Virus record (IMG/VR): IMGVR_UViG_3300020154_000003
Location: 302,039-366,038 of that record
Length of the DNA stretch: 64,000 nucleotides
Strand: one strand, 5' to 3'
Shown: piece by piece, positions 3,359-63,747 of the stretch
Layout of the letters: each line of letters opens with the position of its first letter
How positions within the stretch are numbered: the stretch's first letter is position 1
Notes under the pieces: model-generated
Database searches by the model: none
Seen by the model: the letters and a program-made list of their open reading frames with translations, nothing else
What the model was told of the DNA's origin: nothing
Position numbers and translations under genes: made by a program

Positions 3359-3441
3359 TTTTCATATTTATTACAATCAGATGATTTTATAATAAATACT
3401 AAAAATTTAGAAAAAAGAATAAAAATTTATAAGATTTTCTC

Positions 3442-4224
3442 TTAAAAATCCAAACTAAATTGGACTGTTCTAAATATTGTTGAATCCTTCGCAATAGGGT
3501 TGTTTAACTTACCCACAGCAACAAGATTATTATTATCGTCAAACACACCCACTTCACTGATTTGTACGGGGCTTGTGCTATCCCAAGTTGGGTTTGTTGT
3601 TGAATTATATTGATTCAAAGGCAATACAATTGAAATATCTGTTGTGTAAGCAATCGCTTGAATTTCACTCCTAACATTACCAAAGAAGAAAGCTTCTTCT
3701 CCAAATGCTAATTTATTTGTATCGCCACTCAGGGCACTTGGATAATTTAAATAATCTAACGTATAGGTCTCAGCATCATTGATCTCTTGAACGCCAATAG
3801 TTACTATGGTAGCAGAATTAAATGCAGCCTTAGGTATAGTTGTGCCTGAAAAAGATTCATAACCATCTAATTGATTGGTCAAATCAAGAATTTTCCATCC
3901 ATCCACATCAGGAGTGACCGTTGATCCAGTACCATCTACAATTTGAGCAACGCCAAAGAATTTAGTAGCTGACCAACCTTCACCCGTTTGTCCTGAAGCA
4001 ATGTCTAAGGTATTTTTCATAAATGGGAAGAGAGACCCATCAGGAACAATAATGCTCAACGTCTTATTCACCAAAGAATTCGTTTCCAATTTCTCAATGT
4101 AATTACAATGAATACTAGGCGAATAACCATAAGATTTTCCTAATTCATATGCATTGGCAGTACCGCCAGTAACTGAGTTATCTCCTAGTAAGTATGTAAA
4201 AAATATTGTTTTACCTAAACTCAT
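3442..4224 (-). CDS. Tail/baseplate structural protein
   Basis: C-terminal ISEVGVFDDNNNLVAVGKL motif typical of tail-collar/baseplate proteins; structural-gene context. Confidence 0.6.
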   Translation of the reverse strand: MSLGKTIFFTYLLGDNSVTGGTANAYELGKSYGYSPSIHCNYIEKLETNSLVNKTLSIIVPDGSLFPFMKNTLDIASGQTGEGWSATKFFGVAQIVDGTGSTVTPDVDGWKILDLTNQLDGYESFSGTTIPKAAFNSATIVTIGVQEINDAETYTLDYLNYPSALSGDTNKLAFGEEAFFFGNVRSEIQAIAYTTDISIVLPLNQYNSTTNPTWDSTSPVQISEVGVFDDNNNLVAVGKLNNPIAKDSTIFRTVQFSLDF

Positions 4225-4226
4225 AA

Positions 4227-5813
4227 TTATGAATTATTTACAAATGTAACTGAACCATCAGTCAAGGTTATTTCTACCGTATCAGTTAACGTATTGTTAG
4301 GTGCTGGTACAAAATTATCAGTAACAACAATTGTGTATGTTCCAGTACCCAAATTACTGAAGACATTTGATGCTTGACTAACGCCACCATTAATCGAATA
4401 AACTGGTTCAACAGCATTGCTAACGAATACAGTGATTTTACCATCGCTGACGCTAGATGATGTTGGATTGTTAATAACAAATGACATGTTAAACATATTG
4501 TTAACTGGCTCACAAGCAGATAAGTTGAAGCCAATCGTGGCTCTAGGTAGTGTCCAGTTTCTATTCGATTTATATGTCATGGCGAATAACAATTCCTGAT
4601 CTTCGATAACAAAAATCTTAAGATCATTGAAAACTTTCCCAACTACGTTTCCAAATCTGTCAACCAGATCATGATACGTTGCAGTCAATCCGCTCAACAC
4701 TTTTGGTGTGCTGTCACAACTCAACTTCAAACCAATAGTCCCACCAGTTTCATAATGCCACATGATTGTTGGTAGTTCCAGCACCGGAGTATCTTCAAAA
4801 AGTCCTTCACCATAATGATTTGATGGAGATGCATTGGTGAAATGGATAATACCAATTTTTTTTATCTCCGGGGTTAAACGTTCTATGTAACGAACAAACC
4901 CACCAAAGCTTTTAGTATAATATTGTGAATAATTTCTATCTGTCGATGCAACACCTGCAACTTCCTCAGTAAAAACAATCGCCATATTCCAAACTGGAAC
5001 ATCTCTAACTGGACATATACAGTTCTCCAAAAATGCAATCACACTTTCTTCAATGAAATCAGTTACATATGGTGCGCTATAATATGTTTGAATTGAATCA
5101 CCGCTAATTTCTCTATTGTTATTGTTTGGATACAAAAATGCTCCTGCAGCTATCGATCCTCCTTCACCATTGAAGTTAGGAAGTGGTTTATCAACAGTCA
5201 CAACTAAATTATCTGTGCTCAAAGCACCTGAAATCTTGTTTTCTATTTTATACCAAATATAAGGTACAGCCTCACTCACTGTCGGACTGACAGTTCCACC
5301 GCTTATCAATGGATTTGACCATTTTACAAGTAAATAATCACCAATTACAGGTTCTGTAATATTTGCCAAATAAGTTGGTGATTTTCTGATGGTTAACGTG
5401 GTTCCACCTGCTACTGTTGCAATGTTTATCTGCATGTCAGCCTGTTTCATTGTGAATGAATCGGTCAACAGCGTTGCGGATGTGCCAGTTATTGAGAAGA
5501 ATCCACGTTCAGTAGCACTATTTGTTAAAATATTAGTGTTCGAAACAACGGTAGGTAGTGCAGTATATATTGTTTCCTCATCATCGCTATTCTGTAGAAT
5601 ATGCGAAATAAAAGTCGGATTATTGTCCTTTGGCCTGAGAATATTGGCCATAAACGCATCAAAACTGATGTCATTATTAAACCCATAGTCAATCTCACTA
5701 TCACCAACAGCCCACTTAGTCATGGTCAATTTACCTTGTGAAAGTAATTGTCTACCAACATTCGTTAATTTAATGTTAATTACCGTAGGGTTATTTTTTA
5801 GTATGAAAGACAT
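4227..5813 (-). CDS. Tail/baseplate structural protein with C-terminal Ig-like domain
   Basis: N-terminal KLTNVGRQLL...VGDSEIDY; C-terminal YSINGG...GTYTIVVTD beta-sandwich pattern. Confidence 0.55.
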   Translation of the reverse strand: MSFILKNNPTVINIKLTNVGRQLLSQGKLTMTKWAVGDSEIDYGFNNDISFDAFMANILRPKDNNPTFISHILQNSDDEETIYTALPTVVSNTNILTNSATERGFFSITGTSATLLTDSFTMKQADMQINIATVAGGTTLTIRKSPTYLANITEPVIGDYLLVKWSNPLISGGTVSPTVSEAVPYIWYKIENKISGALSTDNLVVTVDKPLPNFNGEGGSIAAGAFLYPNNNNREISGDSIQTYYSAPYVTDFIEESVIAFLENCICPVRDVPVWNMAIVFTEEVAGVASTDRNYSQYYTKSFGGFVRYIERLTPEIKKIGIIHFTNASPSNHYGEGLFEDTPVLELPTIMWHYETGGTIGLKLSCDSTPKVLSGLTATYHDLVDRFGNVVGKVFNDLKIFVIEDQELLFAMTYKSNRNWTLPRATIGFNLSACEPVNNMFNMSFVINNPTSSSVSDGKITVFVSNAVEPVYSINGGVSQASNVFSNLGTGTYTIVVTDNFVPAPNNTLTDTVEITLTDGSVTFVNNS

Positions 5814-5832
5814 ATATTTTTTAAATAAATAC

Positions 5833-6774
5833 TTACTCCTTTAATTTTAACGCTGCGGCTGTTTCACATATTTCATTGACATAGAAGCTTGAGCAGTACA
5901 TGTTACTTACATACGACAAATCTTCATCGAATGGCGATTTTGCAATGAAATCACCTTTATAAAACATATGTGATCTATCATTTTCGGTAACACCTGCATT
6001 ATGATAGATATTATTACTTTCTAGTTCAGATACTGGCGAAGTTGCCCAACAAAACGACAATTCATCAATTATTTCCGTATCCAGACCCATCAACCAAATA
6101 TTCCACAACAATGCCCACATATCAGCAGTCCACGATTGTATTGGTGATTGAACTGCGTTCTTCTCAGAGGTTACCAACATTGTTTTATATAAAATGTTAC
6201 AATCTCGTTCCACTTTATTCCAGAAATCGTATGATAAATTAAAATTTGAAGTAAATAAGTACTGAGCACCACCGGACATTTCTTGGTTGTTGATTACATG
6301 TGTTGGATTGATTCCCACTACTCGACACATTTTTTCTAATAACCCTAAACCCTTTTCTCTAATATATGCTGCACCGATATACGACCTAGTATCGGACACG
6401 TATATTTTTCTTTTGTCAATATAATCTTTCAAGTTTGGTATTTTTGTAAATATTACATCGCAGTCCATATATAAAACTGCTTTATTTTGTAATATGTCTG
6501 CGTATTCTCCAGTATATAATTGTTTAATTATATGAGGTCTAAGACTAGGTAAATATAATCTTTGAGACAAGTCCCTCGTATCTGGGAGAAAAATTACTCT
6601 AGCATCAGTAGTTTCTTTAAACTCAATTGCTTTTTCATTTATCCCAATTTTAGGATTATAACCAAATAGTATAATAGTTTTATCTTCAATTCCAAATTTT
6701 TTGAAATTGTGCATTTGAACTTGTAGTTGCCAAACGTAGTAATCTGTATCTGGTTGAGCAGTTAAAAACTTCAT
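5833..6774 (-). CDS. GT-A glycosyltransferase resembling protein O-glycosyltransferases (HPAT GT95 / SERGT GT96)
   Basis: DxD motif YMDCDVIF; N-terminal YYVWQxxxxMHNFKK and C-terminal WTADMWA recall plant HPAT/SERGT motifs. Confidence 0.65.
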   Translation of the reverse strand: MKFLTAQPDTDYYVWQLQVQMHNFKKFGIEDKTIILFGYNPKIGINEKAIEFKETTDARVIFLPDTRDLSQRLYLPSLRPHIIKQLYTGEYADILQNKAVLYMDCDVIFTKIPNLKDYIDKRKIYVSDTRSYIGAAYIREKGLGLLEKMCRVVGINPTHVINNQEMSGGAQYLFTSNFNLSYDFWNKVERDCNILYKTMLVTSEKNAVQSPIQSWTADMWALLWNIWLMGLDTEIIDELSFCWATSPVSELESNNIYHNAGVTENDRSHMFYKGDFIAKSPFDEDLSYVSNMYCSSFYVNEICETAAALKLKE

Positions 6775-6788
6775 ATTCTATTGATTAA

Positions 6789-8201
6789 TTATACTGTAAG
6801 AGGCAGCTTAGAAGAAGACACACCAATACTTCCAGATAAAGTATCAAGTGATGCGTGATCCGAAATATTCCATGTAATTCCTCCATTATTAGAGTATAAA
6901 TACGATTTATTTAGAACTGTAGCACCAACAAATATTAACATACCTATGTGAGAGTCATCAGGGCTTTCAATTTGTGAGAATGAACTTCCAGCGGTGCCTG
7001 CTCCCAATATATCTTCAATAGGTTGTGTTATTGTCCAAGTTGCCCCATTATCAGTAGACCTACAAATATTTAATTTTGATGAACTTCCAATAGGTTTAGC
7101 TTGCAATACTAAAGTACCATCAGAAAGTACTACCAATCCAGTATAGTTCATACCTGCTGGCGATGTAGCTAACGTAGTCCATGTCAATCCACCATCGGTA
7201 GTATTAATTAAAACATCTGAAGTAGAACTACCGCCATTTGTTCTAATCATCCAACCAAATCCACTAGTATTTATTGAAAGTGAAGAGAAAGTCGATGATG
7301 GACTACCTAGACCAGTTGTCAAACTACCAGTAATATTTGTCCAAGTTACACCACCATTAACAGTTTTAATTAAACAAGACGTGAAAGGGCCGGGGTAATG
7401 ATACAAACCATATCCTATAGAAGCATTTGCGAAATGCCATTCTTGAACAGCCATAAGAAGACCCGGAAAAGTTACTACACTCCAACTATCCCCACCATTA
7501 GTTGATCGGTAGATATTATTACTCACCGTAGGGCCAGCCATCAATAAATTTTCTGTTACTGCGTATACGCTAATAATATTACTAACACCTGCAGGTTTAT
7601 TAGTCCAAGTAGTACCACCATCAGTAGTTTTCATAAACCCATCATACGTACTATTAATAACGTAACCAGTTAAATTACGGAATGATCCCCGATATGCTGA
7701 TGTAGTCATACCCGGAATTGTAATTTCGCTCCAATTAGCACCTCCATCAGCAGTTTTTAACATTTTTCCTCCAATTGTAGGCGAACCAAATCCTAACCAG
7801 TAATAAACTGGTGGTGGTAAGGTTGTTGTGGTCGTAGTGGTTGTCGTTGTTGTGGTCGTAGTTGTAGTTGTGGTGGTTGTTGGTGGTAAAATAATTGGAC
7901 ATGCAGTATAATCAATACCAACCGATTGAGTTTTTAATGTAGCTATTTGACCACTAGTGATGTCTGTAACCAATTCTAAAAATTCATCTCTTCTTGCATA
8001 GTATTCAGCATCAGTCATTAAACTAACATCACTTTCATTTATTGCTGGATATATATTAGTACTACCAGTAAACGCATTTTTCATATCAAATGAAAAATAT
8101 GTTGCGCCAGTAGTCGTTACTCCATACCAATCAGTGACACCAGTGATAACACTTTTTATCAGTACCGACCTTCTATATTCACCGTTTTGTATTATACTCA
8201 T
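6789..8201 (-). CDS. Virion protein with poly-Thr linker and 7-repeat Asp-box beta-propeller
   Basis: PP-T20-LPPP followed by seven (S/T)x(D/N)GGxxW-type repeats. Confidence 0.75.
   Translation of the reverse strand: MSIIQNGEYRRSVLIKSVITGVTDWYGVTTTGATYFSFDMKNAFTGSTNIYPAINESDVSLMTDAEYYARRDEFLELVTDITSGQIATLKTQSVGIDYTACPIILPPTTTTTTTTTTTTTTTTTTTTLPPPVYYWLGFGSPTIGGKMLKTADGGANWSEITIPGMTTSAYRGSFRNLTGYVINSTYDGFMKTTDGGTTWTNKPAGVSNIISVYAVTENLLMAGPTVSNNIYRSTNGGDSWSVVTFPGLLMAVQEWHFANASIGYGLYHYPGPFTSCLIKTVNGGVTWTNITGSLTTGLGSPSSTFSSLSINTSGFGWMIRTNGGSSTSDVLINTTDGGLTWTTLATSPAGMNYTGLVVLSDGTLVLQAKPIGSSSKLNICRSTDNGATWTITQPIEDILGAGTAGSSFSQIESPDDSHIGMLIFVGATVLNKSYLYSNNGGITWNISDHASLDTLSGSIGVSSSKLPLTV
7821..7880 (-). 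repeat. 20 consecutive Thr codons
   Basis: Plus strand is 20 NGT triplets = mixed ACC/ACA/ACG/ACT codons. Confidence 0.95.
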
Positions 8202-8202: not shown

Positions 8203-11200
8203 TTATGATGTTATTGGGGTTCTCTCCCCTGAAAAGTTAATAAATAATTGTCCTGTTGGTTGATCGATAAATGTCCATGTCGTACCACCATCAGTAGTTC
8301 TAAAATATCCGTTATTGGACGTGCTCGGATCAATAATTAAATGACCAGATGCAACACCAATATTTTCATCAATGAAATAAAGTGCTGAATATGCACGACC
8401 AAGAGTATTAACTGCAGTCCACGTAGTACCACCATCTGTTGATCTAAGTATTTTTGCATCGTTTCCAGTATAACTCATTATCACGAAAACAATATTATCA
8501 TCAATAGCCCATACTTGATTAACACCAAATCCATCAGCAGGTAGATTAGCACTAATATCAGTCCACGTATCGCCACCATCAATTGATTTGTATAATACGT
8601 TATCTGTACTCGTGCTATGTGTAAAGTATGCAACATTATTAGATGGTGCGAACGAAAGAGCCTTAGGTTGGCCAACAGGAGTCGCCAATATTTTAGTCCA
8701 TGTTGTACCACCATTTGTGGTTTTATAAACGCCTTGATAACCACTATTAAACCCGTGATACCCTATTGCGTAACCAATATTTAAATCTTTAAAGTGTATA
8801 CCATTTACAGCCTGACTAACTGCCCCAATAACTAACTCAGATCGAGACCAAGTTACACCGCCATCTGTTGATTTTAAAAATCCGTTAGCCCCAACAGCAC
8901 ATAACACATTACTATTTAATGCTAACACAGCCTTAATACCACCACCATTATATCCTGCAGAATTTAATGCAGGTCTTCTACTAGTCCATGTAGCACCTCC
9001 ATCATTTGTTGTAATTATGTGAGGGAATGTTGCGTTTGAAGTAGATATGGTTGCACCCATAATACCAACTTGCCCAACAAAACTAACATGACTATATCCA
9101 ACACTATCAATTGTGGTTTGTGTGTTGACTGAAGTGAAGTTAAGTCCACTATCAATTGATCTATATGCTGATTCGTTAGTTGTGTACCCAAAATAATCTG
9201 CTGCCCAAAATGATGGTATAGAACCAGCAGGTATTGTTATGGCTTCATTAACTGAGAACGGTAAAGGAGCGTCAATTATAGCACCGCTATCTGATGCTGT
9301 TATGGTGTTAATGTTAAGTGTTAGTGAAGTAGATGCGTCATCACTACTATTAGGACTGTGTGCGCTCATAGTTATCTGAATTGTCAGAGAATCGCTGCTT
9401 AACATAGTGAAGGATGATGAATTGTTTTCAGTACCATCAGTCACTTCGTTCGAATATATCACACTGCCATTCTTTATAATTTCCACTAAATTGCTTGCAT
9501 CACTATCACCTTCTACCGTTGCAATTTGCCCCAAATCAAACCCTAACGTAAATATTGTTCCGTTAGATAAACTTGGGGTTATAGCAATTTCATATTCTAA
9601 GAATATGTCTGCATTACGATTTCCAGTAGTTGCACCGGAAGAGTATACTCTTTCAATTTCAGTCATAAAGAATTCATATTCATTAATAACATATTCTTGT
9701 TGAACACAAATAATATCATCCCACGCAAATGAAAATGTAGTATCCTGTACTCTTCTAACAAATTCACTACCGTCATTACCTAAATGGTTTAATGACTGGT
9801 CAAAACTAACTCCCCTTCTATATGGAAATTTTTGCTTAGTAAATGCTGTGTTTCTAACCAGTACACCACCTTTCTTTAGAATTATTGTGGCACTTAATAA
9901 TTGATCTATGAATCTATGGAAAAAGCTATTGAACTTATTGATAAATGGATAAACGTTAGTAAACGTATATCCATTACTACGTACTGTTGGATGATTGCTT
10001 CGCTTTAAATATTCTTCATACAACTTCTGAACTGTTGGATATAACCCACCTTCATGATCTGTCAGAGTTTTTCTATTTTTAACGTTAATTAATCGTCTAT
10101 TAATAAGTTCAAGGTATTCCAAGAAACTAATCTCGGACAAGTTAGGAAACTCAAAGTCGCCAAAATTAATACCAGTATCAGTACTACCATCAGCAGTAAT
10201 GTAGAAGACATTTATTAAATATCCTATGTTCAAAGCACTAGTATTGAATAAAATTTGTTTCCTATTGGATGAATTCAAAGTAAAATCTTTACCATTTTGA
10301 AGGGTAAGACCATTAATCACAACTTTAATAGCATCCACGTTAGGTGGCTCATAGTCCATAACATAGATGTATTTGTTGATACCACTATTGTAGAAAAATT
10401 TAGAGGTTGAAAAACTATCAATTCTATGACTTTCAGATTTTTTAAGTATCGGATCATTACCAGACGATTTGATGTAACTGATAACCACAACAGGATTTGC
10501 AATCAGGTAATTTTTCAAATCATTATTAACCACAATAATTTCACCAGAATTGATCACATAATCACCAGTATATAGCGAGTTACCTTTGGTTAATGTCATT
10601 CCATTTACCACTAATTGTACCTCACCCAATGGGTCTTCCAATAATGGGATAGACAATCCATCAGGATTGGCAGTAATTTTTGTAACCACGTAATCTACTT
10701 GATTATAAGTACCACCAGTAGATTTGTCGTTGAGATATGTTAATGTAATAACGTCTTTATGTCCATTCGTATAACTTTGTGCAGTCCCTCCTATCAAGAT
10801 AGCCTCTTTACTATCTAAAGGATTTATGTAATAATCAGCACTAGGATCAGTTGATCCTGAACCCTTGGTTAAAGTAAGACCATTAAAACTAACCTGTATA
10901 TCACCTTGAGGAACTTCTGGAATAGTAAATGAAGATGCAGAGGCACCATAAGTGAATGGTATATTAATGTAAAGATAAGGTTTAGTTACACCGCTAGTTG
11001 TAATTGGAAAATTGTGTTCAAGGTTGTAATTCCAAACATCAAATTCAATACCTCTTGAAATATCAAGAGTTATGTCAACTTCTTTAGTATTCAACACTAA
11101 ATTACTATCATTTTGATAATAGTTTGGTGTCGTGTAATGTCTTCTTTCAGTAGTACCTGATTGTACCCACGACTTTTTGTTGTCAACTTTTCTATTCAAT

Positions 11201-12819: not shown

Positions 12820-12861
12820 TGTTTTAAGATTTAATTATAAATACCCGCTAATTTAAAACAA

Positions 12862-13772: not shown

Positions 13773-14375
13773 TTACGTATTTTCATATATTGTAAAATAA
13801 TTACCACCCGCATATAAACTTACTTGATTAAGGTTGCCTATAGCCCTCAACCTTACTGAATTTTCAAATACAGGTAATTCTTGTCTAATAATAAATACGT
13901 CACTATCAATAAGTGGATTCTCAGCCATGTTCTGTTTGGCTTCAATCTTTAATATCGGTCTATTCTCAAAATTTACTGTAGACAATCCAGTACTTGTGAA
14001 GGTAAAGGTGGTCGCAGTCGTACTAGTCGTTTCAATATTGGTGTATGTTATGCCTCCGATGTAATAAATCAACGTTTTAGTTGAACCAGTAGTCGTTGAA
14101 GCACCTACATTCAATCCGTCCGTTGATGGGCTGGTTGAAGTTCTGTATCGAATCGAGTAGTCTGGATTGGAATTGTATTTTCTTAACTCAGGCAACCTAT
14201 TTGAGGAAGTTCCTGTGACTGTATATGAGCCGCTATAACCCGACAGGGAAGTAGAACCGCTATAGTATTCGCCTTCATAGGTGTCAAAAAAACCGTAGTC
14301 CAGACTATTGGATGTCAGGAGAACGTTCATATGGTATGAACTTCCAGAAACAAAGGGGAACGACTTTTTTATCAT
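13773..14375 (-). CDS. Ser/Thr-rich putative structural protein
   Basis: 200-aa ORF in the baseplate operon. Confidence 0.5.
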   Translation of the reverse strand: MIKKSFPFVSGSSYHMNVLLTSNSLDYGFFDTYEGEYYSGSTSLSGYSGSYTVTGTSSNRLPELRKYNSNPDYSIRYRTSTSPSTDGLNVGASTTTGSTKTLIYYIGGITYTNIETTSTTATTFTFTSTGLSTVNFENRPILKIEAKQNMAENPLIDSDVFIIRQELPVFENSVRLRAIGNLNQVSLYAGGNYFTIYENT

Positions 14376-16645: not shown

Positions 16646-16673
16646 GTATTTACTTTTCAATAAATACATTTGA

Positions 16674-19882: not shown

Positions 19883-19974
19883 ATTTATAATAATTTATAG
19901 TTTATTATAAATACTGGAGTTTTTCGGAAAATTTATTGTTTTTTAGTAAAAACTGTAAAAAACTGTAATTTTTT

Positions 19975-20328: not shown

Positions 20329-20333
20329 AGTAT

Positions 20334-21140
20334 TTATTTGTCATCAATTGATTGAAGTAATTTTTCTCCGTAAAGTATTCCATCAATACCTTTTGTTCTT
20401 GCTTTCTCAGCCACCAAGGTGTTAATTAAGTCAGTTTCACTCATTCCAAAATCTTTAGTTTTGGCTTTAAAATCTAAAGTAGGAAACCAAAGTTCAGCCA
20501 AAGCCTTCATCGGATTTTCGTTATTGCCAATGCTCTTATCAATGGTATCAGTTTTCAATACTGACTTAAATTCAATTTCGTATGGTTTGTATCCGGGTAA
20601 CGGCTTTATCACAAAGAAATTACCTGATATATTCTTTTTCAAAGGAGCCTTACGGTATGCTTTAAGAACTTCTTTCTTAGTTTTTACTGGCTTATCGGGT
20701 ATATACATTGATTCATCTTCTTCAGATAAAACTCTCAACATATCACTCTGATCGTGCTTTAATTTAAATTCCTTAAAAGCATTTTGGATGGTATTCAATA
20801 TTTCCATTGCTGTTTTCTTATCACACTTCAATCTAATTGAAGGGACTGCAGCATCAGGTCTTACCAATAGATATGCTGCCAATCTGGAATGACCATCCAG
20901 TACATCATTATCTTTAGCCACCCATATAGGTGATAACTCTTCGCCCTTATTCAGTTTATCAACAAAGTAACTTACTGAATCATTATCAATAAAAGGTTGG
21001 GTTGGATTTAAGTCATTGACATTAATTCCAGCCACTTCATACGGGTGCTGAGTGTTATTCAACTCGCTAGTAACAAATTTAAAGGGAGCACTTACTTGAG
21101 GACTATCCTTAGGTTTGTATATATTGGTTTGAATTTCCAT
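20334..21140 (-). CDS. ParB/Srx-like N-terminal domain protein
   Basis: LSPIWV...VLDGHSRLAAY matches the ParB/Srx DGHxR motif. Confidence 0.65.
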   Translation of the reverse strand: MEIQTNIYKPKDSPQVSAPFKFVTSELNNTQHPYEVAGINVNDLNPTQPFIDNDSVSYFVDKLNKGEELSPIWVAKDNDVLDGHSRLAAYLLVRPDAAVPSIRLKCDKKTAMEILNTIQNAFKEFKLKHDQSDMLRVLSEEDESMYIPDKPVKTKKEVLKAYRKAPLKKNISGNFFVIKPLPGYKPYEIEFKSVLKTDTIDKSIGNNENPMKALAELWFPTLDFKAKTKDFGMSETDLINTLVAEKARTKGIDGILYGEKLLQSIDDK

Positions 21141-21175
21141 CGTACCAATAAATACTGGATATTTTATAAATTTAG

Positions 21176-25393: not shown

Positions 25394-25400
25394 AAATGTA

Positions 25401-25426: not shown

Positions 25427-25452
25427 ATATAATAAATACTTTAAAAAGTCGA

Positions 25453-27108: not shown

Positions 27109-27155
27109 TTTGTTTCTGTTAACTAAATTATTAAGTTATTTATCAATAAATACTC

Positions 27156-28531: not shown

Positions 28532-28555
28532 AGTTTTTTACTTATAAATACTAGA

Positions 28556-36171: not shown

Positions 36172-36207
36172 ATCACTTATTTTTTATAAATACTTATTTA
36201 TCAACTT

Positions 36208-44409: not shown

Positions 44410-47400
44410 TTTTTTATTTTATATAAATACTTAAATTATTATCCTAATATGGTGCCGCCCATCCAATTTATACCGTTATACACTAACATAATTGACGTAT
44501 AATTTGCGTTAATTATCGCTGTTGAACTTCCATTAATTAAATACCCATTACCATCAACAGTTATATTATTATCTAACGCACCACCTATTGCATCGCAAAT
44601 ATAAATCTGCTGTTTAAAAGTAGGCGATGGCGGTAAGTAAATAACTCCTGCGGTATCCCCAAAATAGTGAATGAAATGAGATGACGTTGACGCTGTAAAG
44701 GATGAGCCAGTTACAATCTCCAAACCAACTACATTTACTGCAATCCCTGATGTTATGCCAGTTACGTAGTTAACATCCACCAATGAATGTTTCGTAAAAC
44801 CTGACGATAGATCAGTAACATAACGGAACTTCTGTGTCGATAATAATTCAGGATGTACAACAAAATATTCTTCAAAATCAGAATAATTGCGCTTAAATAT
44901 TGGATTTTCCTGTACTCCACTATTGATATACATTAGAGTATCAAATACAAAAACCATATTATTAGGGTTGTTATCTGAACCTGTATGTTGATCAATATAA
45001 TTACCATTCAAATCTACCCTAACCATTTGAGATTTAGATGACATGAATATATGATAGTCTTCATTTACGAATACATTACTATATGTACCAATACTTGGTA
45101 CTTGAGCAACGTTCGTATTGAATTCTTCATCGAATACTCCTGTCGCATCAACAACCATAAGGCCAGTATTCACCGATGAACTTCCATATGTTGAAAATGA
45201 ACCTGATAGTAAAAATCTATCAGTACTATCCAATTTTATAATTGAAGAAACTTGTCCATCAAATATTTCAGGAATAAATGTTTCACTTATTGTCCCATCT
45301 GTATTTAAAGCAACTATATAAGGAGTGCTTAACGTATTTCCACTATACTCAGTAAAAGCCCCAACAACTATAAGAGTATCATCATTTAATACCGCAAAAT
45401 CATATGGAGTGTCATTAAATCCAGCACCAGTATCAAAAGTATTATCTAAAGTACCATCTGTGTTTACTCTTCTTATATAAGTCACACCACTTACGGATTC
45501 AGTTATTCTTATGTAAAGTTTACCATCACTCAAACCTAACACTTTACCCACATTATGGATAGATTCACCACTTAAATAAAACGTAAAACCAGTATCAACA
45601 GTACCATCATGTAATAATTTAACAAGACAAGTACATTGGAAGCTATTAAAACTGTTAAATACACCATACACATAAATGTTTTCATCGTCATCAACAAAAA
45701 TACCTGAAATATTATTCGATGGGCCTGAACCAATATTGCTTGAGAAATTTTCATTTATAACTCCATCACCACTTAATAATGCTATACCACTTGAATTAAT
45801 ATCGTTAACGTCAGTAAATGCACCTGAGATCAAAAGATCACCTGTTGAGGGTATTCTTGCCATCCTATTGATACTTGCATTGACAGAAATATAATTGAAC
45901 TGGTTTAGTTTTTCATATGATGTTGAAATAGTCTTTGACGTTTCAGAATAATCACGGAAATTTAAATGGAAACCATCATTAACTTTATCTAAAGTTAACG
46001 TAACTACATCACCAGAAATGGCTGTTTGACCTGTCAATTCACCACCCAAAACCACCGTGTCAAGAGCACGTTTAACGCCATTATCTGCCAGATTAAGTAA
46101 GTTGCTCGTTAAACCAGTTACATAGTTAACATCGGCAATACTATGTTTTGTAAATCCTGACGAATAATCAGAATTATAGTTCATTTTATCATTTAGAGTA
46201 ATATTTTCTAAAGGAAAATCTGCTTCAAGACCAGTATCTGAAAGTAATGCCAAGTTAATACACGAATTTCCTTGATATGTCGTAAATGCCCCTCCAACTA
46301 GATATTGAACTGGTGAAGAATCCACTTTTTCAATTACTTTTGGCCCTCCACTAAAACCAAACGCAGCATTGAAGCCAGTACCAATATTAAATGTATTATC
46401 ACGAGTACCATTACTATTCAAACGAACAATTCTATTTGTTGTTGTTCCTGATAAAATAGTAAATCTACCAACTGCAATAATTTTAGTACTATCTACTAAC
46501 ACATCATGTACTGTATGAATAACACTGCTACTAAAACCAGCATCCATATCAAAGGTATTGTCAACACTACCATCAGTATTTAAGCGAATTAATTTATTAT
46601 AACCAGTAACCCCGCTATATGAAGAAAAACTACCACCCACCAAAATTTTATCATCTGGTTGAATTTCAATCACAAATACTGTGCTATTAAAACCAGCACC
46701 AGCATCAAATGTATTATCAACACTACCATCAGTATTTAAGCGAATTATTCTATTGAATCCAGTAACACCACTGTATGAAGTAAAATTACCACCAACCAAA
46801 ATTTTATCATCAGATTGAATCTTAATTGTATTCACTGTACCATTAAAACCAACACCGACATCAAATGTGTCATCAATACTCCCATCATTATTTAATCTAA
46901 CAATACGATTAGATGTGACTCCATCATAACTAGTAAAATCACCACCAACCAGAACTTTACTGCCGACAACTAATTCATCTACTTCAATAATATTCACATC
47001 ACCATTAAAACCATCACCAACAATGAAGGTATTATCGAATGCAAGACTAGAATCGTTTAATCTTAGTATTCTATTTTGCGTTGAGGCATTAAATGTTGTT
47101 GAGAATCCACCACCAACATAAAGACCATCAGTAGTCCTCGCCAATGTTTTTATATTTGATATATTTACCGATCTTTCAAGATTATATTGTGTATCATACT
47201 TTAAAAGTGTTATGTCGTTTCCAACATAGATGGCCGCACCGTATGATAATATTGCTAATACTTCACCGCTACTATAAAATTTACTATTTAATTGAATTCC
47301 CTTACTATATGAGTTCCAAAGATTGAATTGGGATGACTTCTGTGTAAAAATACCATCACTAGCTATAGTTGTCGATTCGGTTAACTCCCCACCAATTTTA

Positions 47401-52943: not shown

Positions 52944-52970
52944 TTATTTTTTTGTATATCTATCTTAATA

Positions 52971-57456: not shown

Positions 57457-57561
57457 TTATATAGTATTTATTTTTGTAACTTACCGACCGTTCAATGAGT
57501 TACAAGAATTCATTGATTTCGCTCGTCTTTCGTTACAGATAAATACTATCTAAACCGATAG

Positions 57562-57632: not shown

Positions 57633-59771
57633 TTACATCAACTGTGCAGCTTTGTCGTAGCTGGTTATAAAGTCTTCATACTTGAATTGAGTAGTGCTAC
57701 CATCAGGTGAAGATACCGCCACGCCTCTACTTCTAGCATGTAAACATGCAAGATCGTACACGGATAATTTGTCTTTGGTGATCAACGATCTCAGAATTTG
57801 TGAAGTCTGACCTCTACTGTTCTCCAGAGTAGCAAGACTTCCTGATTCCAGTTCCAAATCAGCCCAAATGTATTCTTTCATCAACAAATCGATGATACAG
57901 ATAACCACTGTCGAACTCTCATTAGCCAATGTCATGGCATTACTGATCGTTTTAGGAACGAAAAGAGGGTTCGATTCAGGATATTCTCTTTCCATCAGAC
58001 CAAACACGCAATCCTTCATGGTATGCATAGGTCTGCTTTGGAAATTATGTACTTGAACCACAGCATATCTCGCACCAGCATCATTACATGCGTTCACGTC
58101 AATATCAACGTATTCAGCACAAGCACCTTGTCTATGTCTTACGTCACCTGAGTGGCAAGAATTCAACGCAGCACTTTGCAAACGAGTAAATGATATATGA
58201 TCAACATTTTTCAAATCATTTGCATGAAATGAAACACTCAAATCCAAATCTTCGTAACCCTGTTCATCAAACCAATGGATGTAAGGTCTGATAACTTTTG
58301 CAGACTCAGCAAAAGGAATTCTTGTTCCTCTCACGTAAGTTTTAACAGAAGTATTGATACTTCTCATTGCCGATGGCAATGGAATGTTTTTCAACCTTTC
58401 ATCAATCCAGACACTACCCAACGGTTCAAGGTTACCAAACTGATCGGAGATACAGTTCAAAATAACTCTCTGAATTAAGGAAATTAACTCAGCATTTATC
58501 GGAGGTAGTGGCTCCAACTGCTTTTTGATTGATCTCTTACCTTTGATCATCACGCTTCTCGGAACATTTACTGTTGCTCTGTTTAAGAAATGGTTATATA
58601 GTTCCCACAAAACCTTTCTACTCACTTTAGGAGCGATTTTTTGAAATGTTTCCAGTACTGGAACAGCATCAAAGTTTCTCAACATCCAGTCAAGCCTTCT
58701 AGCATATTCTCCGGGTCTTTGGGATAGAACAGCCATACCTTTCAATTGACTTTCCTTAAAAGCAGCCTCAACTAAACCATTGAAGGTCTTAATTTCCTTT
58801 GCAGCGTTTCTCAACACATCGAAGGCAGATGCAGTTCTAGGAAACTGTTTTGCATATTCGGATGGGTGAAGAATTTCACCGAGTCTCAACCATCTTCCGA
58901 TTTTGAGTTTCATTTCACCCAAGTCGAGATTGGTTTTTTCAAGTAACCCAAGAAGATACTTTCTTTCACTTCTTGAAAATTTCTTGAACTTAAAACGTTC
59001 TCTTGCAGCTTCTTGAAACGCTTTGATATTGTTAAAAAACCATTTTTTTCTACCGTCTTTAACCTCACCGATAGTGACTTTTGGAACAGCAGGCAATGAA
59101 ATATCACCACCTGAAAGGTGTGTAGCGATTCTCAACACATCGGTTGCTGTTTTAACAGGTACGTTTAAACCATGACCAGCAAGCAAGCACAATGTTTCCT
59201 TGAAAGGAACCGTTGATGGCATAACCAAAGAATCACGCTGATTCAATATAAACCATTCAACTACAGCTTTATCGTTTTCAGTGATTGACTGATTGATAGA
59301 TACAAGTCTTGTGAAGATATTCGCAAACCCTTCTTCAGTACCAAGCTGGATAAGTGAAAACTCAGTGTTTTCAAACTTAATACCTCTGTCAAGTAATTCT
59401 TGATCAGGTTCCCATTTACCTTCAGACCAGTAATGTTTAACAGCCATTCTGAACAAGCCTATAAGACTTGTTTCCATGACTTGCTTAGGAAAATTCTTAA
59501 AAAGAGGGGAATAGTTGCCAACACCTAATTTCTTTTGAAGATGGGCAACAGCTTCGATATACCAATCGATGGAAACTACTTCCAAAGCTTCGGGGGATAG
59601 GATGTACCCCAATTGCATTAACTCAGCTTGGATTGTGTCAGCCACCGCAGACGAAACTGAACCGTCAGAAGTCGGAATCATCATCCCTCTTTGGAGGGCA
59701 ATGATATTTTTGGTTAAAGAACTTTCATTAGTTCTAACTTTAACGGCAGCGTTCGCAGTAGATGTACTCAT
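57633..59771 (-). CDS. Large alpha-helical protein with C-terminal TerD-like domain
   Basis: C-terminal DLDLSV...HSGDV...AEYVDID...RYAVVQVHNF TerD pattern; helical N-terminal region of about 480 aa. Confidence 0.7.
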   Translation of the reverse strand: MSTSTANAAVKVRTNESSLTKNIIALQRGMMIPTSDGSVSSAVADTIQAELMQLGYILSPEALEVVSIDWYIEAVAHLQKKLGVGNYSPLFKNFPKQVMETSLIGLFRMAVKHYWSEGKWEPDQELLDRGIKFENTEFSLIQLGTEEGFANIFTRLVSINQSITENDKAVVEWFILNQRDSLVMPSTVPFKETLCLLAGHGLNVPVKTATDVLRIATHLSGGDISLPAVPKVTIGEVKDGRKKWFFNNIKAFQEAARERFKFKKFSRSERKYLLGLLEKTNLDLGEMKLKIGRWLRLGEILHPSEYAKQFPRTASAFDVLRNAAKEIKTFNGLVEAAFKESQLKGMAVLSQRPGEYARRLDWMLRNFDAVPVLETFQKIAPKVSRKVLWELYNHFLNRATVNVPRSVMIKGKRSIKKQLEPLPPINAELISLIQRVILNCISDQFGNLEPLGSVWIDERLKNIPLPSAMRSINTSVKTYVRGTRIPFAESAKVIRPYIHWFDEQGYEDLDLSVSFHANDLKNVDHISFTRLQSAALNSCHSGDVRHRQGACAEYVDIDVNACNDAGARYAVVQVHNFQSRPMHTMKDCVFGLMEREYPESNPLFVPKTISNAMTLANESSTVVICIIDLLMKEYIWADLELESGSLATLENSRGQTSQILRSLITKDKLSVYDLACLHARSRGVAVSSPDGSTTQFKYEDFITSYDKAAQLM

Positions 59772-59953: not shown

Positions 59954-59968
59954 TGTACCTTTGAAAAG

Positions 59969-60040
59969 TAGGGATTAAGGGATTTGCACCCATATCTGTG
60001 TTCGCAATGAACACCGTTCTAAAAGTTAAACTAAGCCCCT
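59969..60040 (-). ncRNA. Degenerate 72-nt tRNA-like RNA unit 1
   Basis: Cloverleaf AGGGGCT-TA-GTTT/GAAC-G-GTGTT CATTGCG AACAC-AGAT-ATGGG TGCAAAT CCCTT-AATCCCT-A; lacks D-loop GG, TTC, U33 and CCA. Confidence 0.7.
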
Positions 60041-60058: not shown

Positions 60059-60089
60059 CAAATATAGTTAAAAGTAACTTATTGTCAAC
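60059..60089 (-). promoter_or_regulatory. Bacteroidetes-type housekeeping (early) promoter
   Basis: GTTG-N19-TATATTTG matches TTTG-N19-21-TAnnTTTG with one mismatch; also reads TTGACA-N16-TATATT. Confidence 0.7.
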
Positions 60090-60197
60090 CTCTTTTTGAT
60101 ATTTTTTTGTGGTTTTACCCTTATTTTTCGAAGGGTAAAGATAAATACGAATTTTAATGGAAAAAGTTATAGAATTTTATAACTTTTTCCTATTTTT

Positions 60198-61288: not shown

Positions 61289-63586
61289 TTAAATTGAACA
61301 AGCACCACTTTCACATGAAGCGTCAGCAAAATTGGATGAGAAATCATCGGTAGACGCATCGTTAATGTTCGCATAATATAGAGTTTTAAGTCCCATTTTA
61401 TATGAATACATTATATCTTTTATAACCACGGACAAAGGTAATTCATTATTTGGATAATTACTATAGTCGTAGTAATGATTTGCACTAATTGATTGATCCA
61501 TCCACTTCTGCATTACAGCACAGATGTTAGTAATTCCACGGTTATCCCCCATTCCGAAAGCAAATTGGTATTTATTCTTCAATTTGCTAATGTCAGGCAC
61601 AACCTGTCTCAAAACCCCCTGTTTTGACACTTTAGCGACAATAAGTGAACGTACTGGCTCGATACCGTTCGTTGAATTGGTGGTTAAAGAACTGCTTTCA
61701 CAAGGCATTTGAGCACTTAGGGTTGAATTTCTCAATCCGTGCTGAAGAATGCTTGCTCTAAGCCCTTCCCAATCCAAAGAATACGATCTTTTCACTAAAT
61801 TATCGACTTCTCTATTATAAGTATCAATCGGAAGTATGCCTTTTGAGTATTTTGTTCTATCAAACCACTCACAAGCACCCTTTTCTTTCGCAAGTTCGTT
61901 GCTGGCCTTCAAAAGATAGTACTGGAAGTGCTCCATAAGTTCATCAATCAATGGCAATGCTGCCTTATCGGTATAAGATACGTCATTTTTCGCTAGGAAA
62001 TAGGCCAAATTTGTCAAACCAACGCCAATTGATCTTCTTTTCAACATTTTTGTTGCTGCCTTCACCGGATAATCTTGATTATCGATTACAAAATCCAGAC
62101 TTCTCACAATATTATCACAGATACCTTCCAATTCACTTAAATTTTTAAGTTCACCAACATTAATTGCAGACAATACACACAATGCTATCTCACCAGCATC
62201 ATCAATTGAGTTTTCAATGTGAGTAATCGGTGTTGTTGGTAAGGTAATTTCAACACAGAGATTTGACATCTTTATAGAATCTAAGAAAGAACTATGAATA
62301 TTTGCATGATCCATGTTCATAACATACATTCTACCAGTTTCAATTCTTTCCTGAGCGAAATTATTCATCACATCTTTTGCGGGAATTTTTTTCACAGATA
62401 TTTTTTTCTTCCCTTCATATTCTTCGTACAACTTTTCGAAGGCATCATTATCGCCTGATACGAATGCTTCATACAGATCAGGTACTTCACCCGGAGAAAA
62501 GAGTGTAATATCTTTTCCTTCAACGAATCTCTTATAGAATAAACGGTTGAATTGAATTCCATAATCCATTTTACGCACTCTGTTGTCATCAGTACCTTTG
62601 TTATTCTTCAATACTAGAATATCCAATATTTCCTTATGCCAGAACGGAAAAAATGTTGTTGATGCTCCACCTCTAATACCATTCTGAGTACATGATTTTG
62701 TGGTGGATTCAAATTTCTTTAAGAAAGGAATTACACCAGTATGAATTACTTCACCATTTCTAATCTTATCTCCAATCGCACGAATACGTCCGAAGTTCAA
62801 ACCAATACCAGCACGTTTCGATGTGTAATACATCACTGCTAAATCGCTGTGGCCAATACTATCCAACGAATCTCCAACATCAACTAGCGTACAGCTTGAA
62901 TACTGTCTGTTAGGGGTTCTAACTCCTGACATGATAGGTGTGGGCAACGAAATTTTAAAGTTGCTTATATCGTTGTAGAATGATCTAATTTTTTGAAGTC
63001 TACTCTCAGTCTCTTCAGCATACAAGGTCATCGCGATCAACATAAACATGAACTGTGGAGTCTCATACACTTTACCAGTCTTTCTATCTTTCAATAGATA
63101 CTTATCAATCAACTGTTGCAGACCAGCGTAAACGAATGTGAAATCTCTTTGATGTCTTAGATAAGAATTTAATTTTTCAAATTCTTCTTCAGTGTATTTT
63201 TCTAAAACTATTTTATCATATACTCCCACCTTCACATTTTTTTTCACAACCTCATAAAGAGATGGTAAGTTATCGCCAGCAGAATTAAAAACTTGTTTTC
63301 TCAATAAATAATTTTGAAGGTTCGCTGCAACGAATTGATAGTTGGGGGTTTCTTCCTTAATCAATGATGCTGCTGACTGAATCAATATTTTATGTATTTC
63401 CTCAGTTTTAATCCCGTTGAACAACTGCAGATTAGCATTCATCGCAATATCTGATGCAGAGACATTATTTATCCCCTCTGTTGCCCATATTAGGACTTTA
63501 TTAATTTTTTCATAATCAAGCTGAACTTTAGTGCCATCGCGCTTAATAATTTGTATGTTATCTGTTTCTACGTTATTTGAACCCAT
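61289..63586 (-). CDS. nrdA: Class Ia ribonucleotide reductase alpha subunit with ATP cone
   Basis: IIKRDG ATP cone, PTPIMSG, YSSC, SNLCVEI, LCVLSA, MPCESS, GLKTLYY, C-terminal CESGAC. Confidence 0.97.
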   Translation of the reverse strand: MGSNNVETDNIQIIKRDGTKVQLDYEKINKVLIWATEGINNVSASDIAMNANLQLFNGIKTEEIHKILIQSAASLIKEETPNYQFVAANLQNYLLRKQVFNSAGDNLPSLYEVVKKNVKVGVYDKIVLEKYTEEEFEKLNSYLRHQRDFTFVYAGLQQLIDKYLLKDRKTGKVYETPQFMFMLIAMTLYAEETESRLQKIRSFYNDISNFKISLPTPIMSGVRTPNRQYSSCTLVDVGDSLDSIGHSDLAVMYYTSKRAGIGLNFGRIRAIGDKIRNGEVIHTGVIPFLKKFESTTKSCTQNGIRGGASTTFFPFWHKEILDILVLKNNKGTDDNRVRKMDYGIQFNRLFYKRFVEGKDITLFSPGEVPDLYEAFVSGDNDAFEKLYEEYEGKKKISVKKIPAKDVMNNFAQERIETGRMYVMNMDHANIHSSFLDSIKMSNLCVEITLPTTPITHIENSIDDAGEIALCVLSAINVGELKNLSELEGICDNIVRSLDFVIDNQDYPVKAATKMLKRRSIGVGLTNLAYFLAKNDVSYTDKAALPLIDELMEHFQYYLLKASNELAKEKGACEWFDRTKYSKGILPIDTYNREVDNLVKRSYSLDWEGLRASILQHGLRNSTLSAQMPCESSSLTTNSTNGIEPVRSLIVAKVSKQGVLRQVVPDISKLKNKYQFAFGMGDNRGITNICAVMQKWMDQSISANHYYDYSNYPNNELPLSVVIKDIMYSYKMGLKTLYYANINDASTDDFSSNFADASCESGACSI

Positions 63587-63627
63587 GTCTATGTTAATAT
63601 AAAATGATTAAAGTAAAGCATCCCCAT

Positions 63628-63650
63628 CCCTCACCATGAATGAGGGTTTT
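63628..63650. terminator. Hairpin upstream of nrdA
   Basis: CCCTCA/TGAGGG stem; T-run on the plus strand only. Confidence 0.4.
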
Positions 63651-63747
63651 GAATACATAATAAATTTTGGTTTTACGACTTCCGAAGTGTTTTTATAAAT
63701 ACAACTCAGACTTTTAATTTTCCAGAAGAAAGTGAAATTTTATCTTC

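What the first reader, a model, noticed from the sequence alone, without database searches (positions are those of the whole stretch)
3392..63702. Intergenic GTATTTAT motif is the reverse complement of the T4 late promoter
Seen: 15 intergenic copies found by eye, oriented GTATTTAT(A/T) on the coding strand, 7 to about 110 nt upstream of the nearest start codon or RNA unit. Established: T4 late promoters read TATAAATA on the coding strand. Inference: a phage sigma factor with a different, inverted-looking -10 element; less likely, antisense promoters or a DNA-binding site. Opposite-orientation copies occur at 20330 and 57464.
Basis: partly seen in the sequence, partly recalled or inferred. Interest (0 to 1): 0.6.

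Follow-up and report, generated by a model that had tools for sequence, protein, structure and literature searches.

The report
Conserved jumbo-phage promoter octamer GTATTTAT
GTATTTAT is almost certainly the -10-type core of a phage promoter class, mostly in front of virion genes, that is conserved across a large uncultured clade of 250-370 kb phages and is probably read by an unannotated phage sigma factor whose closest structural match is T4 gp55.

Summary
The window is the last 64 kb of a 366-kb soil jumbo phage, with all genes on the minus strand. It holds 22 GTATTTAT copies against 6.2 expected. Seventeen lie on the coding strand, and 15 of those sit in the 2.7% of the window that is intergenic.

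Genome-wide, 60 of 87 copies are intergenic, against 5.0 +/- 2.2 in shuffles. Fifty-eight of those 60 point at a co-oriented gene, mostly 11-25 nt before the start codon. The extended logo is W(-14), A(-1), GTATTTAT, then A at +5/+6, with no -35 element.

All 12 related jumbo phages tested are enriched for the octamer. It is invariant in front of the tail-sheath gene in 25 phages while the flanks diverge. Identifiable downstream genes include sheath, portal, terminase, prohead proteases, baseplate and an endolysin-like protein, but also NrdA and the helicase/PolB cluster.

The phage encodes three sigma-like proteins and shows three promoter classes. Two classes are ECF-type. By elimination, conservation and fold (best match T4 gp55, Z 10.6), a 257-aa unannotated protein is the likeliest reader. 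No transcription start data exist.

The reverse-complement relation to T4's TATAAATA is real as sequence. It needs no inverted mechanism, because the same-orientation alignment already matches 6 of 8 positions.

The parts
3392..3399 (-). Promoter octamer, 33 nt before the 67-aa gene 3155-3358 (weak Arc-like repressor match); AA at +5/+6
5825..5832 (-). Promoter octamer, 11 nt before the 528-aa gene 4227-5813; AA at +5/+6
12837..12844 (-). Promoter octamer, 17 nt before the 1538-aa BNR-repeat protein gene 8203-12819
16660..16667 (-). Promoter octamer, 14 nt before the likely start (16645) of a baseplate-wedge-like gene; the gp6-like wedge gene 14379-16235 follows in the same direction
19907..19914 (-). 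Promoter octamer, 24 nt before the glycosyltransferase-like gene 18479-19882
21148..21155 (-). Promoter octamer, 7 nt before gene 20334-21140; the transcript would have almost no leader
25432..25439 (-). Promoter octamer, 38 nt before the 1405-aa polyvalent protein gene 21176-25393; the only window site without A at +5
27146..27153 (-). Promoter octamer, 37 nt before the 86-aa gene 26848-27108
28544..28551 (-). Promoter octamer, 12 nt before the 180-aa gene 27989-28531, directly after the PolB stop codon
35379..35386 (-). Promoter octamer, 17 nt before gene 34990-35361; nearest upstream promoter-like site for the helicase (32703-34520) and PolB (28556-32365) cluster
36186..36193 (-). Promoter octamer, 14 nt before gene 35689-36171
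44423..44430 (-). Promoter octamer, 13 nt before the 1250-aa DUF5122 beta-propeller protein gene 40657-44409
57539..57546 (-). Promoter octamer, 82 nt before gene 56530-57456; a 13-pair terminator-like hairpin (57599-57570) with a T tail lies just upstream
60141..60148 (-). Octamer about 100 nt before tRNA-Gln (59968-60040), preceded by a 14-pair hairpin (60190-60159). It overlaps an AAC-N16-CGTAT class-A-like match (60144-60168). The tRNA also has its own host-type promoter-like site at 60059-60088
63695..63702 (-). Promoter octamer, 108 nt before the ribonucleotide reductase large subunit gene 61289-63586
6896..6903 (-). Coding-strand copy inside gene 6789-8201, 121 nt before the start of gene 5833-6774; possible internal promoter or chance; lacks A at +5
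13891..13898 (-). Coding-strand copy inside gene 13773-14375, 120 nt before the start of gene 12862-13770; possible internal promoter or chance
20330..20337 (+). Opposite-strand copy in the 5-nt gap between two minus-strand genes; consistent with chance
57464..57471 (+). Opposite-strand copy that forms an inverted pair with 57539-57546 around 67 bp. It points into the 3' end of gene 57633-59771. Function unknown and possibly chance; the leader fold is not significant

Best explanation
GTATTTAT (occasionally CTATTTAT) is the -10-type core of a phage-specific promoter class of a 366-kb jumbo phage. The host is probably a Bacteroidota bacterium (inferred). The element sits on the non-template strand a few bases upstream of the transcription start. 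The start is predicted at the conserved A 5-6 nt after the octamer. There is no -35 box, only a weak T/A-rich patch about 14 nt upstream. Leaders are very short, typically 10-13 nt. The class drives most identifiable virion and lysis genes, plus some nucleotide-metabolism and replication genes. Host core RNA polymerase is most likely directed to it by a phage-encoded, previously unannotated 257-aa sigma-like protein at G000:31400-32173, outside the window. The two phage ECF-type sigma factors most likely serve two other promoter classes of classical ECF form. Shown here: enrichment, orientation, position, conservation across phages and the kinds of downstream genes. Inferred: that it is a promoter, where transcription starts, and which sigma reads it.
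For: Statistics: 22 copies against 6.2 expected in the window. Sixty of 87 genomic copies lie in the 9.3% intergenic DNA, against 5.0 +/- 2.2 in shuffles of the same segments, and 58 of 60 point at a co-oriented gene.
Geometry: the octamer mostly ends 11-25 nt before the start codon (mode 14-17 in two relatives). If it is a promoter element it can therefore only be a -10-type element.
Specificity: of 24 single-base variants only CTATTTAT is also clearly enriched.
Logo: A at -1 and A at +5 (51/60 here; 223/248, 80/95 and 77/91 in relatives), with no AAC or TTG -35 signal.
Conservation: all 12 related jumbo phage records are enriched, with 60-147 copies against 20-80 of a control word. In 80 related loci, 248 of 306 copies are intergenic. 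In front of the tail-sheath gene of 25 phages, AGTATTTAT, a TTT at -16..-14 and AA at +5/+6 are invariant while the flanks and the distance to the ATG vary.
Downstream genes: tail sheath, portal, large terminase, two prohead proteases, an endolysin-like protein and baseplate wedge.
Terminator-like hairpins directly precede two window sites.
Reader: there are three sigma-like genes and three promoter-like classes. Class A (AAC-N16-CGTATAA) and class B (TAACCTT-N13-15-CCGTTA) have the classical ECF form. Class B precedes the ECF1 gene itself. The third protein is as conserved as core virion and replication proteins (53-56% identity), whereas the ECF sigmas are only 31-33% identical. Class A copy numbers vary from 2 to 38 between relatives. 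The predicted N-terminal domain of the third protein best matches T4 gp55 (7d7d_F, Z 10.6, rmsd 2.4 A, 95 residues), followed almost only by sigma region-2 structures. ESM Atlas neighbours are viral clusters auto-named sigma factor. T4 late promoters have the same architecture: a tight 8-bp -10-type box, an AT-rich downstream segment and no -35 (PMC2988020).
Against: No transcription start data exist. The only RNA-labelled public runs are soil assemblies kept as contigs, probably DNA, and they run across the sites.
The sigma assignment of the 257-aa protein is weak at sequence level. Pfam Sigma70_r2 scores 19.5 bits, below the 24-bit cut-off, and only 8 of 34 homologues match at all. Profile comparisons with gp55 and with ECF1 are not significant, and the pairwise alignment z-score is about 2. 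Z 10.6 for a helical domain is suggestive, not proof.
No experiment or covariation links this protein to this motif; the link rests on elimination and conservation.
The class also precedes NrdA and the helicase/PolB cluster, so 'late' is an approximation.
A spike of five genes with the ATG exactly 4 nt after the octamer hinted at leaderless mRNAs starting at the conserved A. It is not reproduced in two relatives, so the start position is uncertain.
Distant phages with 23-26% identical homologues of the 257-aa protein (Flavobacterium phage immuto, LR756508) are not enriched for the octamer.
Confidence: 0.6

Rival explanations
1. The octamer is a promoter element, but it is read by one of the two phage ECF-type sigma factors, or by host sigma A helped by a phage factor, and not by the 257-aa protein.
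For: The ECF sigmas are the only proteins here that pass Pfam sigma thresholds. The class-A -10 box CGTATAAT shares GTAT with the octamer. At window 60141-60168 the octamer is preceded by C, with an AAC 16 nt upstream. At two tRNA clusters the octamer, or GTATTTAC, lies inside the spacer of a host-type TTG...TAnnTTTG site.
Against: The octamer class shows no AAC -35 signal, and A rather than C precedes the G. Two separate ECF-form classes already account for two ECF sigmas. The ECF sigmas diverge to 31-33% identity and class-A counts vary widely, while the octamer is invariant across the clade. TAnnTTTG is not enriched in intergenic DNA (51 of 434).
Confidence: 0.2
2. The octamer acts at RNA level, as a processing site or a translation-initiation signal for Shine-Dalgarno-less mRNAs, rather than as a promoter.
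For: It often lies at a narrow distance (14-17 nt) from start codons. Genes lack Shine-Dalgarno sequences, with only about 10% showing an SD-like tetramer.
Against: The distance to the start ranges from 4 to over 100 nt. It is 55-75 nt at the tail-sheath gene, where the octamer is nevertheless invariant in 25 phages. The motif also precedes a tRNA region. Terminator-like hairpins directly upstream fit the start of transcription units.
Confidence: 0.05
3. The octamer is read in inverted fashion as TATAAATA(C) on the template strand by a gp55-like factor, in the way AR9 gp226 reads a template-strand promoter.
For: When the octamer is followed by A (27 of 60 copies) its reverse complement equals T4's TATAAATA at 8 of 8 positions. 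A sigma2-like phage factor that reads the template strand exists (PMC9209446), and its structure 7s01_A appears among the fold matches (Z 8.6).
Against: The following base is A or T about equally (27 A, 22 T of 60), so the full T4 octamer is not conserved. The conserved extra base is the G. The same-orientation alignment already gives 6 of 8 matches, including A-12 and A-8. AR9's mechanism belongs to a phage multisubunit polymerase on uracil DNA, and no phage polymerase beta-subunit domain was found here.
Confidence: 0.04
4. The octamer is a DNA site for something other than transcription initiation, such as a repressor or nucleoid protein, or it is a compositional artefact of AT-rich spacers.
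For: It is a short AT-rich word in AT-rich intergenic DNA.
Against: Shuffles of the intergenic segments themselves give 5.0 +/- 2.2 against 60 observed. Orientation bias is strict at 58 of 60. Single-base variants are not enriched. The octamer is invariant across diverged phages.
Confidence: 0.05

Closest known systems
Bacteriophage T4 late promoters (TATAAATA at -13 to -6), read by gp55 with gp33 and the gp45 sliding clamp
   Same: Both have a tightly conserved 8-bp AT-rich -10-type box, no -35 element, an AT-rich segment downstream, some tens of copies per genome and a position in front of virion genes (PMC2988020). Six of 8 positions are identical in the same orientation, including the A-12 and A-8 equivalents (PMC7892883).
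   Different: The central AA is TT here, and an extra conserved 5' G (and A before it) is present. There is a weak T/A patch about 14 nt upstream. The candidate sigma is 257 aa with a second, conserved C-terminal helical domain, whereas gp55 is 185 aa with sigma region 2 only. No significant sequence similarity to gp55 was found. No gp45-type clamp was found by Pfam DNA_PPF. The class also precedes NrdA and a replication cluster.
ECF (group 4) sigma factor promoters, for example B. subtilis sigma W/X/M type (AAC -35 box, CGT -10 box; from my own knowledge)
   Same: The same phage has two such classes and two ECF-type sigma genes. Phage sigma factors redirect host core polymerase in both cases.
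   Different: The GTATTTAT class has no AAC -35 box, and A rather than C precedes the G.
Bacteroidota sigma A promoters (-33 TTTG, -7 TAnnTTTG; from my own knowledge)
   Same: The -10-type element lies close to the start. TAttTAT shares TA..T with TAnnTTTG. The likely host phylum is the same.
   Different: There is no TTTG in either box. TAnnTTTG is not enriched in this phage's intergenic DNA. Host-type sites occur separately in front of tRNA genes.
AR9 non-virion RNA polymerase promoter recognition by gp226
   Same: It is a phage sigma2-like specificity factor with a short AT-rich late promoter (PMC9209446), and it appears among the fold matches.
   Different: AR9 reads the template strand, on uracil DNA, with a phage multisubunit polymerase. 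No such polymerase domain was found here.

Membership tests
T4-type late promoter system (gp55/gp33/gp45) | Tightly conserved 8-bp AT-rich -10-type box with no -35 element | tested here: met
   Logos from 60, 248, 95 and 91 sites. Only one single-base variant is clearly enriched. A weak T/A patch about 14 nt upstream is an addition.
T4-type late promoter system (gp55/gp33/gp45) | Consensus TATAAATA on the non-template strand | tested here: not met
   The consensus is GTATTTAT(A/T), matching 6 of 8 positions in the same orientation. Sense-oriented TATAAATA copies are mostly the reverse complement of the octamer in divergent spacers.
T4-type late promoter system (gp55/gp33/gp45) | Precedes late (virion and lysis) genes | tested here: met
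   Sheath, portal, terminase, two prohead proteases, an endolysin-like protein and baseplate. It also precedes NrdA and the helicase/PolB cluster, so it is not exclusive.
T4-type late promoter system (gp55/gp33/gp45) | Specificity factor of the gp55 family | tested here: inconclusive
   The best fold match of the 257-aa protein's N-domain is gp55 (7d7d_F, Z 10.6, rmsd 2.4 A). Profile and pairwise sequence comparisons are not significant. An extra C-terminal domain is present.
T4-type late promoter system (gp55/gp33/gp45) | Activation through a gp45-type sliding clamp and the co-activator gp33 | tested here: inconclusive
   There is no Pfam DNA_PPF match in the genome. Other clamp families and gp33 were not searched. 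The conserved C-terminal L-Y-F-L stretch loosely resembles gp55's L-D-F-L-Y tail, which is a lead only.
T4-type late promoter system (gp55/gp33/gp45) | Transcription starts a fixed few bases downstream of the box | not testable with these tools
   Only assembled contigs of soil runs were available.
ECF sigma-dependent promoters | AAC-containing -35 box 16-17 nt upstream of a CGT-containing -10 box | tested here: not met
   No AAC signal at the expected position, and A rather than C before the G. Classes A and B of the same genome do meet this feature.
Bacteroidota sigma A promoters | -33 TTTG and -7 TAnnTTTG | tested here: not met
   The octamer lacks TTTG. TAnnTTTG occurs 51 times intergenic out of 434, which is no enrichment.
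Sigma-70 family (for the 257-aa candidate reader) | Region 2 domain recognisable by sequence and by fold | tested here: inconclusive
   Pfam Sigma70_r2 gives E 8.6e-4 and 19.5 bits, below the 24-bit cut-off, and 8 of 34 homologues match. About 25 of the top 27 fold matches are sigma region-2 structures. Foldseek's top rows are sigma factors but with E above 0.1. ESM Atlas neighbours are auto-named sigma factor.

The most novel reading that the evidence does not exclude
The octamer is recognised in the opposite polarity to all sigma-70-type -10 elements. A gp55-like factor bound to a cellular core polymerase would read TATAAATA(C) on the template strand, as AR9 gp226 does for a phage polymerase. 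The exact reverse-complement relation to the T4 late promoter would then be functional rather than coincidental.
Probability: 0.04. Interest if true: 0.85.

Novelty: new variant of a known kind. Interest (0 to 1): 0.45.

Why it matters
The finding gives a usable promoter consensus, and a three-class transcription map, for a large clade of 250-370 kb phages known only from metagenomes. More than 560 homologues of the candidate sigma were found, all unnamed. It also nominates that protein family as a gp55-like sigma factor with a second domain. If confirmed, T4-style transcription from -10-only promoters would extend well beyond the T4 family, probably into Bacteroidota phages. It would also supply a compact, orthogonal sigma/promoter pair for hosts that have few genetic tools. 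The octamer helps annotation as well, by marking true start codons, operon boundaries and very short leaders.

Tried and rejected
- Near-identity DNA search of 25 kb against the phage collection: no match.
- Related loci from the PolB protein alone: none. Relatives were reached only through an alignment of the 257-aa protein.
- PDB sequence search with that profile: only spurious gp41 hits.
- Profile comparison with ECF1 and with T4 gp55: not significant. Pairwise alignment z-score about 2.
- Foldseek on the whole model: sigma factors on top, but none with E at or below 0.001.
- Sequencing runs: the stretch is held only by soil metagenome assemblies. The four runs labelled metatranscriptomic are stored as contigs of 90-95% similar strains and cross the sites, so they give no start or expression information.
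- Leaderless-mRNA idea: five genes have the ATG exactly 4 nt after the octamer. Two relatives do not reproduce this, so it is kept only as a weak hint.
- Rfam scan of the window: nothing.
- Fold of the 82-nt leader at 57450-57534: not significant, z -1.4.
- E. coli-type sigma-70 promoter scan: no excess, 81 against 83.
- Phage multisubunit polymerase (Rpb2_6 domain) and gp45-type clamp (DNA_PPF): no match.
- Literature searches for the octamer and for Flavobacterium or jumbo phage late promoters: no prior description found.
- Distant phages with weak homologues of the candidate sigma (Flavobacterium phage immuto, LR756508): no enrichment of the octamer.
Full report
**Setting.** The window is bases 302,039-366,038 of a 366,038-bp IMG/VR virus record. 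The record is rated complete, has 36% G+C and comes from soil. All real genes in the window are on the minus strand. Recognisable products include:
- an SbcD-like exonuclease, baseplate wedge proteins, a helicase and a family-B DNA polymerase;
- a 1405-aa polyvalent protein and huge beta-propeller proteins;
- ribonucleotide reductase.

Only about 10% of genes have a Shine-Dalgarno-like tetramer, and leaders are A-rich and G-poor. The nearest cultured relatives of one core protein are Flavobacterium phages. The host is therefore probably a member of Bacteroidota; this is an inference.

- GTATTTAT occurs 22 times in the window, against 6.2 +/- 2.0 in shuffles.
- Seventeen copies are on the coding strand.
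- The five plus-strand copies match the per-strand chance level.
- In the whole genome, 60 of 87 copies are intergenic. Dinucleotide shuffles of the same intergenic segments give 5.0 +/- 2.2, so AT-richness is not the cause.
- Fifty-eight of the 60 intergenic copies point at a co-oriented gene.
- Coding-region copies (27) are close to the count of a control word (20), so they look like chance.
- Among all 24 single-base variants only CTATTTAT is also clearly enriched upstream of genes.

**Anatomy.**
- The extended logo is A at -1, GTATTTAT, a weakly A/T position, then A at +5 (51/60) and +6 (45/60). A weak T/A-rich patch lies about 14-16 nt upstream.
- Nothing resembles a -35 box.
- The octamer usually ends 11-25 nt before the start codon, with a mode of 14-17 nt in two relatives. 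If it is a promoter element, it can therefore only be a -10-type element, and the transcripts would have very short leaders.
- I predict the start at the conserved A 5-6 nt downstream. This is an inference.
- Five genes in this genome have their ATG exactly 4 nt after the octamer, which hinted at leaderless mRNAs. Two related genomes do not show this spike, so I give it little weight.
- In the window, terminator-like hairpins lie directly upstream of the sites at 57539 and 60141, as expected where a new transcription unit begins.

**Conservation.**
- A 257-aa protein of this phage has more than 560 unnamed homologues, many on contigs of 246-371 kb.
- All 12 related viral records tested are enriched for the octamer, with 60-147 copies against 20-80 of a control word.
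- In 80 related loci, 248 of 306 distinct copies are intergenic, and the logo is the same (A at +5 in 223/248; position -14 is A or T in 245/248).
- Two complete relatives with 26% G+C, fetched whole, give 95/147 and 91/133 intergenic copies and the same logo.
- In front of the tail-sheath gene of 25 phages, AGTATTTAT, a TTT at -16..-14 and AA at +5/+6 are invariant. The flanks diverge and the distance to the ATG varies from about 55 to 75 nt. The divergently transcribed neighbouring gene has its own copy. This is a clear phylogenetic footprint, and it argues against a ribosome-binding role.
- Two distant phages with only 23-26% identical homologues of the 257-aa protein are not enriched.

**What the class drives.**
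- Genes directly downstream of copies include tail sheath, portal, large terminase, two prohead proteases, an endolysin-like protein, baseplate wedge proteins, a glycosyltransferase and large repeat proteins.
- Copies also precede ribonucleotide reductase. The copy at 35379 is the nearest upstream promoter-like site for the helicase/PolB cluster.
- 'Late' therefore describes most, but not all, of the class.

**Who reads it.**
- The genome has no match to the RNA polymerase beta-subunit domain, so host core polymerase is presumably used.
- It encodes two ECF-type sigma factors with regions 2 and 4, and the 257-aa protein with a sub-threshold region-2 match.
- Upstream regions contain two further enriched motif classes, both of classical ECF form:
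  - class A, AAC-N16-CGTATAA, spread over 80-260 kb;
  - class B, TAACCTT-N13-15-CCGTTA, concentrated at 158-176 kb. A class-B site precedes the ECF1 gene itself, which fits the usual autoregulation of ECF sigmas.
- The octamer class occupies the complementary parts of the genome, 0-120 and 280-366 kb. Three sigma-like proteins and three classes suggest a one-to-one assignment.
- Between genomes the 257-aa protein is 53-56% identical, like sheath, portal, terminase and PolB. The ECF sigmas are only 31-33% identical, and class A copy numbers vary from 2 to 38. The invariant octamer fits the conserved protein.
- An AlphaFold model (pLDDT 78) has two helical domains. In an exhaustive structural comparison the N-terminal domain best matches chain F of 7D7D (Z 10.6, rmsd 2.4 A, 95 residues), which is T4 gp55. 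It is followed almost exclusively by sigma region-2 structures, and several full-length sigma factors align over both domains.
- ESM Atlas neighbours are viral clusters auto-named sigma factor.
- Sequence-level tests against gp55 or ECF1 are not significant. The protein-motif link is therefore a reasoned inference, which I put at about 0.55.

**Relation to T4.**
- T4 late promoters are a tight TATAAATA box at -13 to -6 with an AT-rich downstream segment and no -35. About 50 exist per genome (PMC2988020).
- gp55 inserts A-12, A-9 and A-8 of the non-template strand into pockets (PMC7892883).
- The base after the octamer is A or T about equally, however, and T4's box is nearly palindromic. In the same orientation TATTTAT(A/T) equals TATAAATA at 6 of 8 positions and keeps the A-12 and A-8 equivalents.
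- Sense-oriented TATAAATA copies in this genome are almost all the far strand of octamers in divergent spacers.
- The simplest reading is a same-orientation variant of a T4-like -10-only promoter, with the central AA changed to TT and a 5' G added.
- An inverted, template-strand reading has a precedent in AR9 gp226 (PMC9209446), but nothing here requires it.

**Limits.**
- No start-site or expression data could be obtained.
- Gene calls are my own crude ORF calls.
- The clamp and gp33 side of the T4 mechanism was tested only by one Pfam family.

**Verdict.** This is a real, strongly supported, clade-wide phage promoter element. It works like a T4 late promoter but is not a member of that family by sequence. 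Its probable reader is a new, unannotated gp55-like two-domain sigma family. The finding is of moderate interest and is a new variant of a known kind.

Noticed in passing
G000:80000-260000 and 158000-176000 (outside the window); window 60144-60168 has one class-A-like match: There are two further promoter-like classes of classical ECF form: AAC-N16-CGTATAA (63 matches against 16 control) and TAACCTT-N13-15-CCGTTA (32 against 16, with 22 in one 20-kb bin). The phage also has two ECF-type sigma genes, at G000:175356-175919 (+) and 300487-301059 (-). The first gene has a class-B site upstream.
   Followed up: partly
G000:123540-123613 and 125586-125659 (outside the window): The genome carries 54 tRNA genes. 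Two have anticodon CUA (amber suppressors, which aragorn labels Pyl). Window ORFs read normally with code 11, and recoding was not examined.
   Followed up: no
window 60059-60088 (-): A host-type (Bacteroidota sigma A-like) TTGACA-N-TAtaTTTG site lies 18 nt upstream of tRNA-Gln (59968-60040). Similar sites precede other tRNA genes. At G000:101814 and 90318 the octamer (or GTATTTAC) sits inside the spacer of such a site.
   Followed up: partly
window 59968-60040 (-): ARAGORN calls a tRNA-Gln(UUG) here, but the Rfam gathering-threshold scan of the window reports no family at all, not even tRNA.
   Followed up: no
window 21176-25393 (-): A 1405-aa polyvalent protein combines an ADP-ribosyltransferase domain, a 2H phosphoesterase/Acb1-like domain and a CCA-adding/poly(A) polymerase head with its RNA-binding domain.
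   Followed up: no
window 40657-56525 (-): Four consecutive giant genes encode proteins of 1250, 1452, 1372 and 1184 aa. The first two are full of DUF5122 beta-propeller repeats, and the last two have no Pfam match.
   Followed up: no
window 57464-57546: Two octamers form an inverted pair around 67 bp that contain an 8-bp hairpin. The plus-strand copy points into the 3' end of the upstream gene. The predicted leader fold is not significant (z -1.4).
   Followed up: partly
window 6896-6903 and 13891-13898 (-): The only two coding-strand copies inside genes both lie about 120 nt before the start of the next gene. They could be internal promoters or chance.
   Followed up: no
window 23100-29000: Four soil runs from 2025, in a different study from the source sample, hold contigs 90-95% identical to this stretch, so close strains of the phage recur in soil. 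One stretch of about 1 kb (24300-25070) is uncovered in all four runs.
   Followed up: partly
G000:31400-32173 (+), C-terminus of the 257-aa protein: A conserved [LIVM]-Y-[FY]-[LIVF]-[EQ]-K stretch lies near the acidic C-terminus. It loosely resembles the clamp-binding L-D-F-L-Y tail of T4 gp55, but it is predicted helical and was not tested.
   Followed up: no
window 3155-3358 (-): A 67-aa gene directly behind an octamer has a weak Arc-like repressor match (E 1.5e-4).
   Followed up: no
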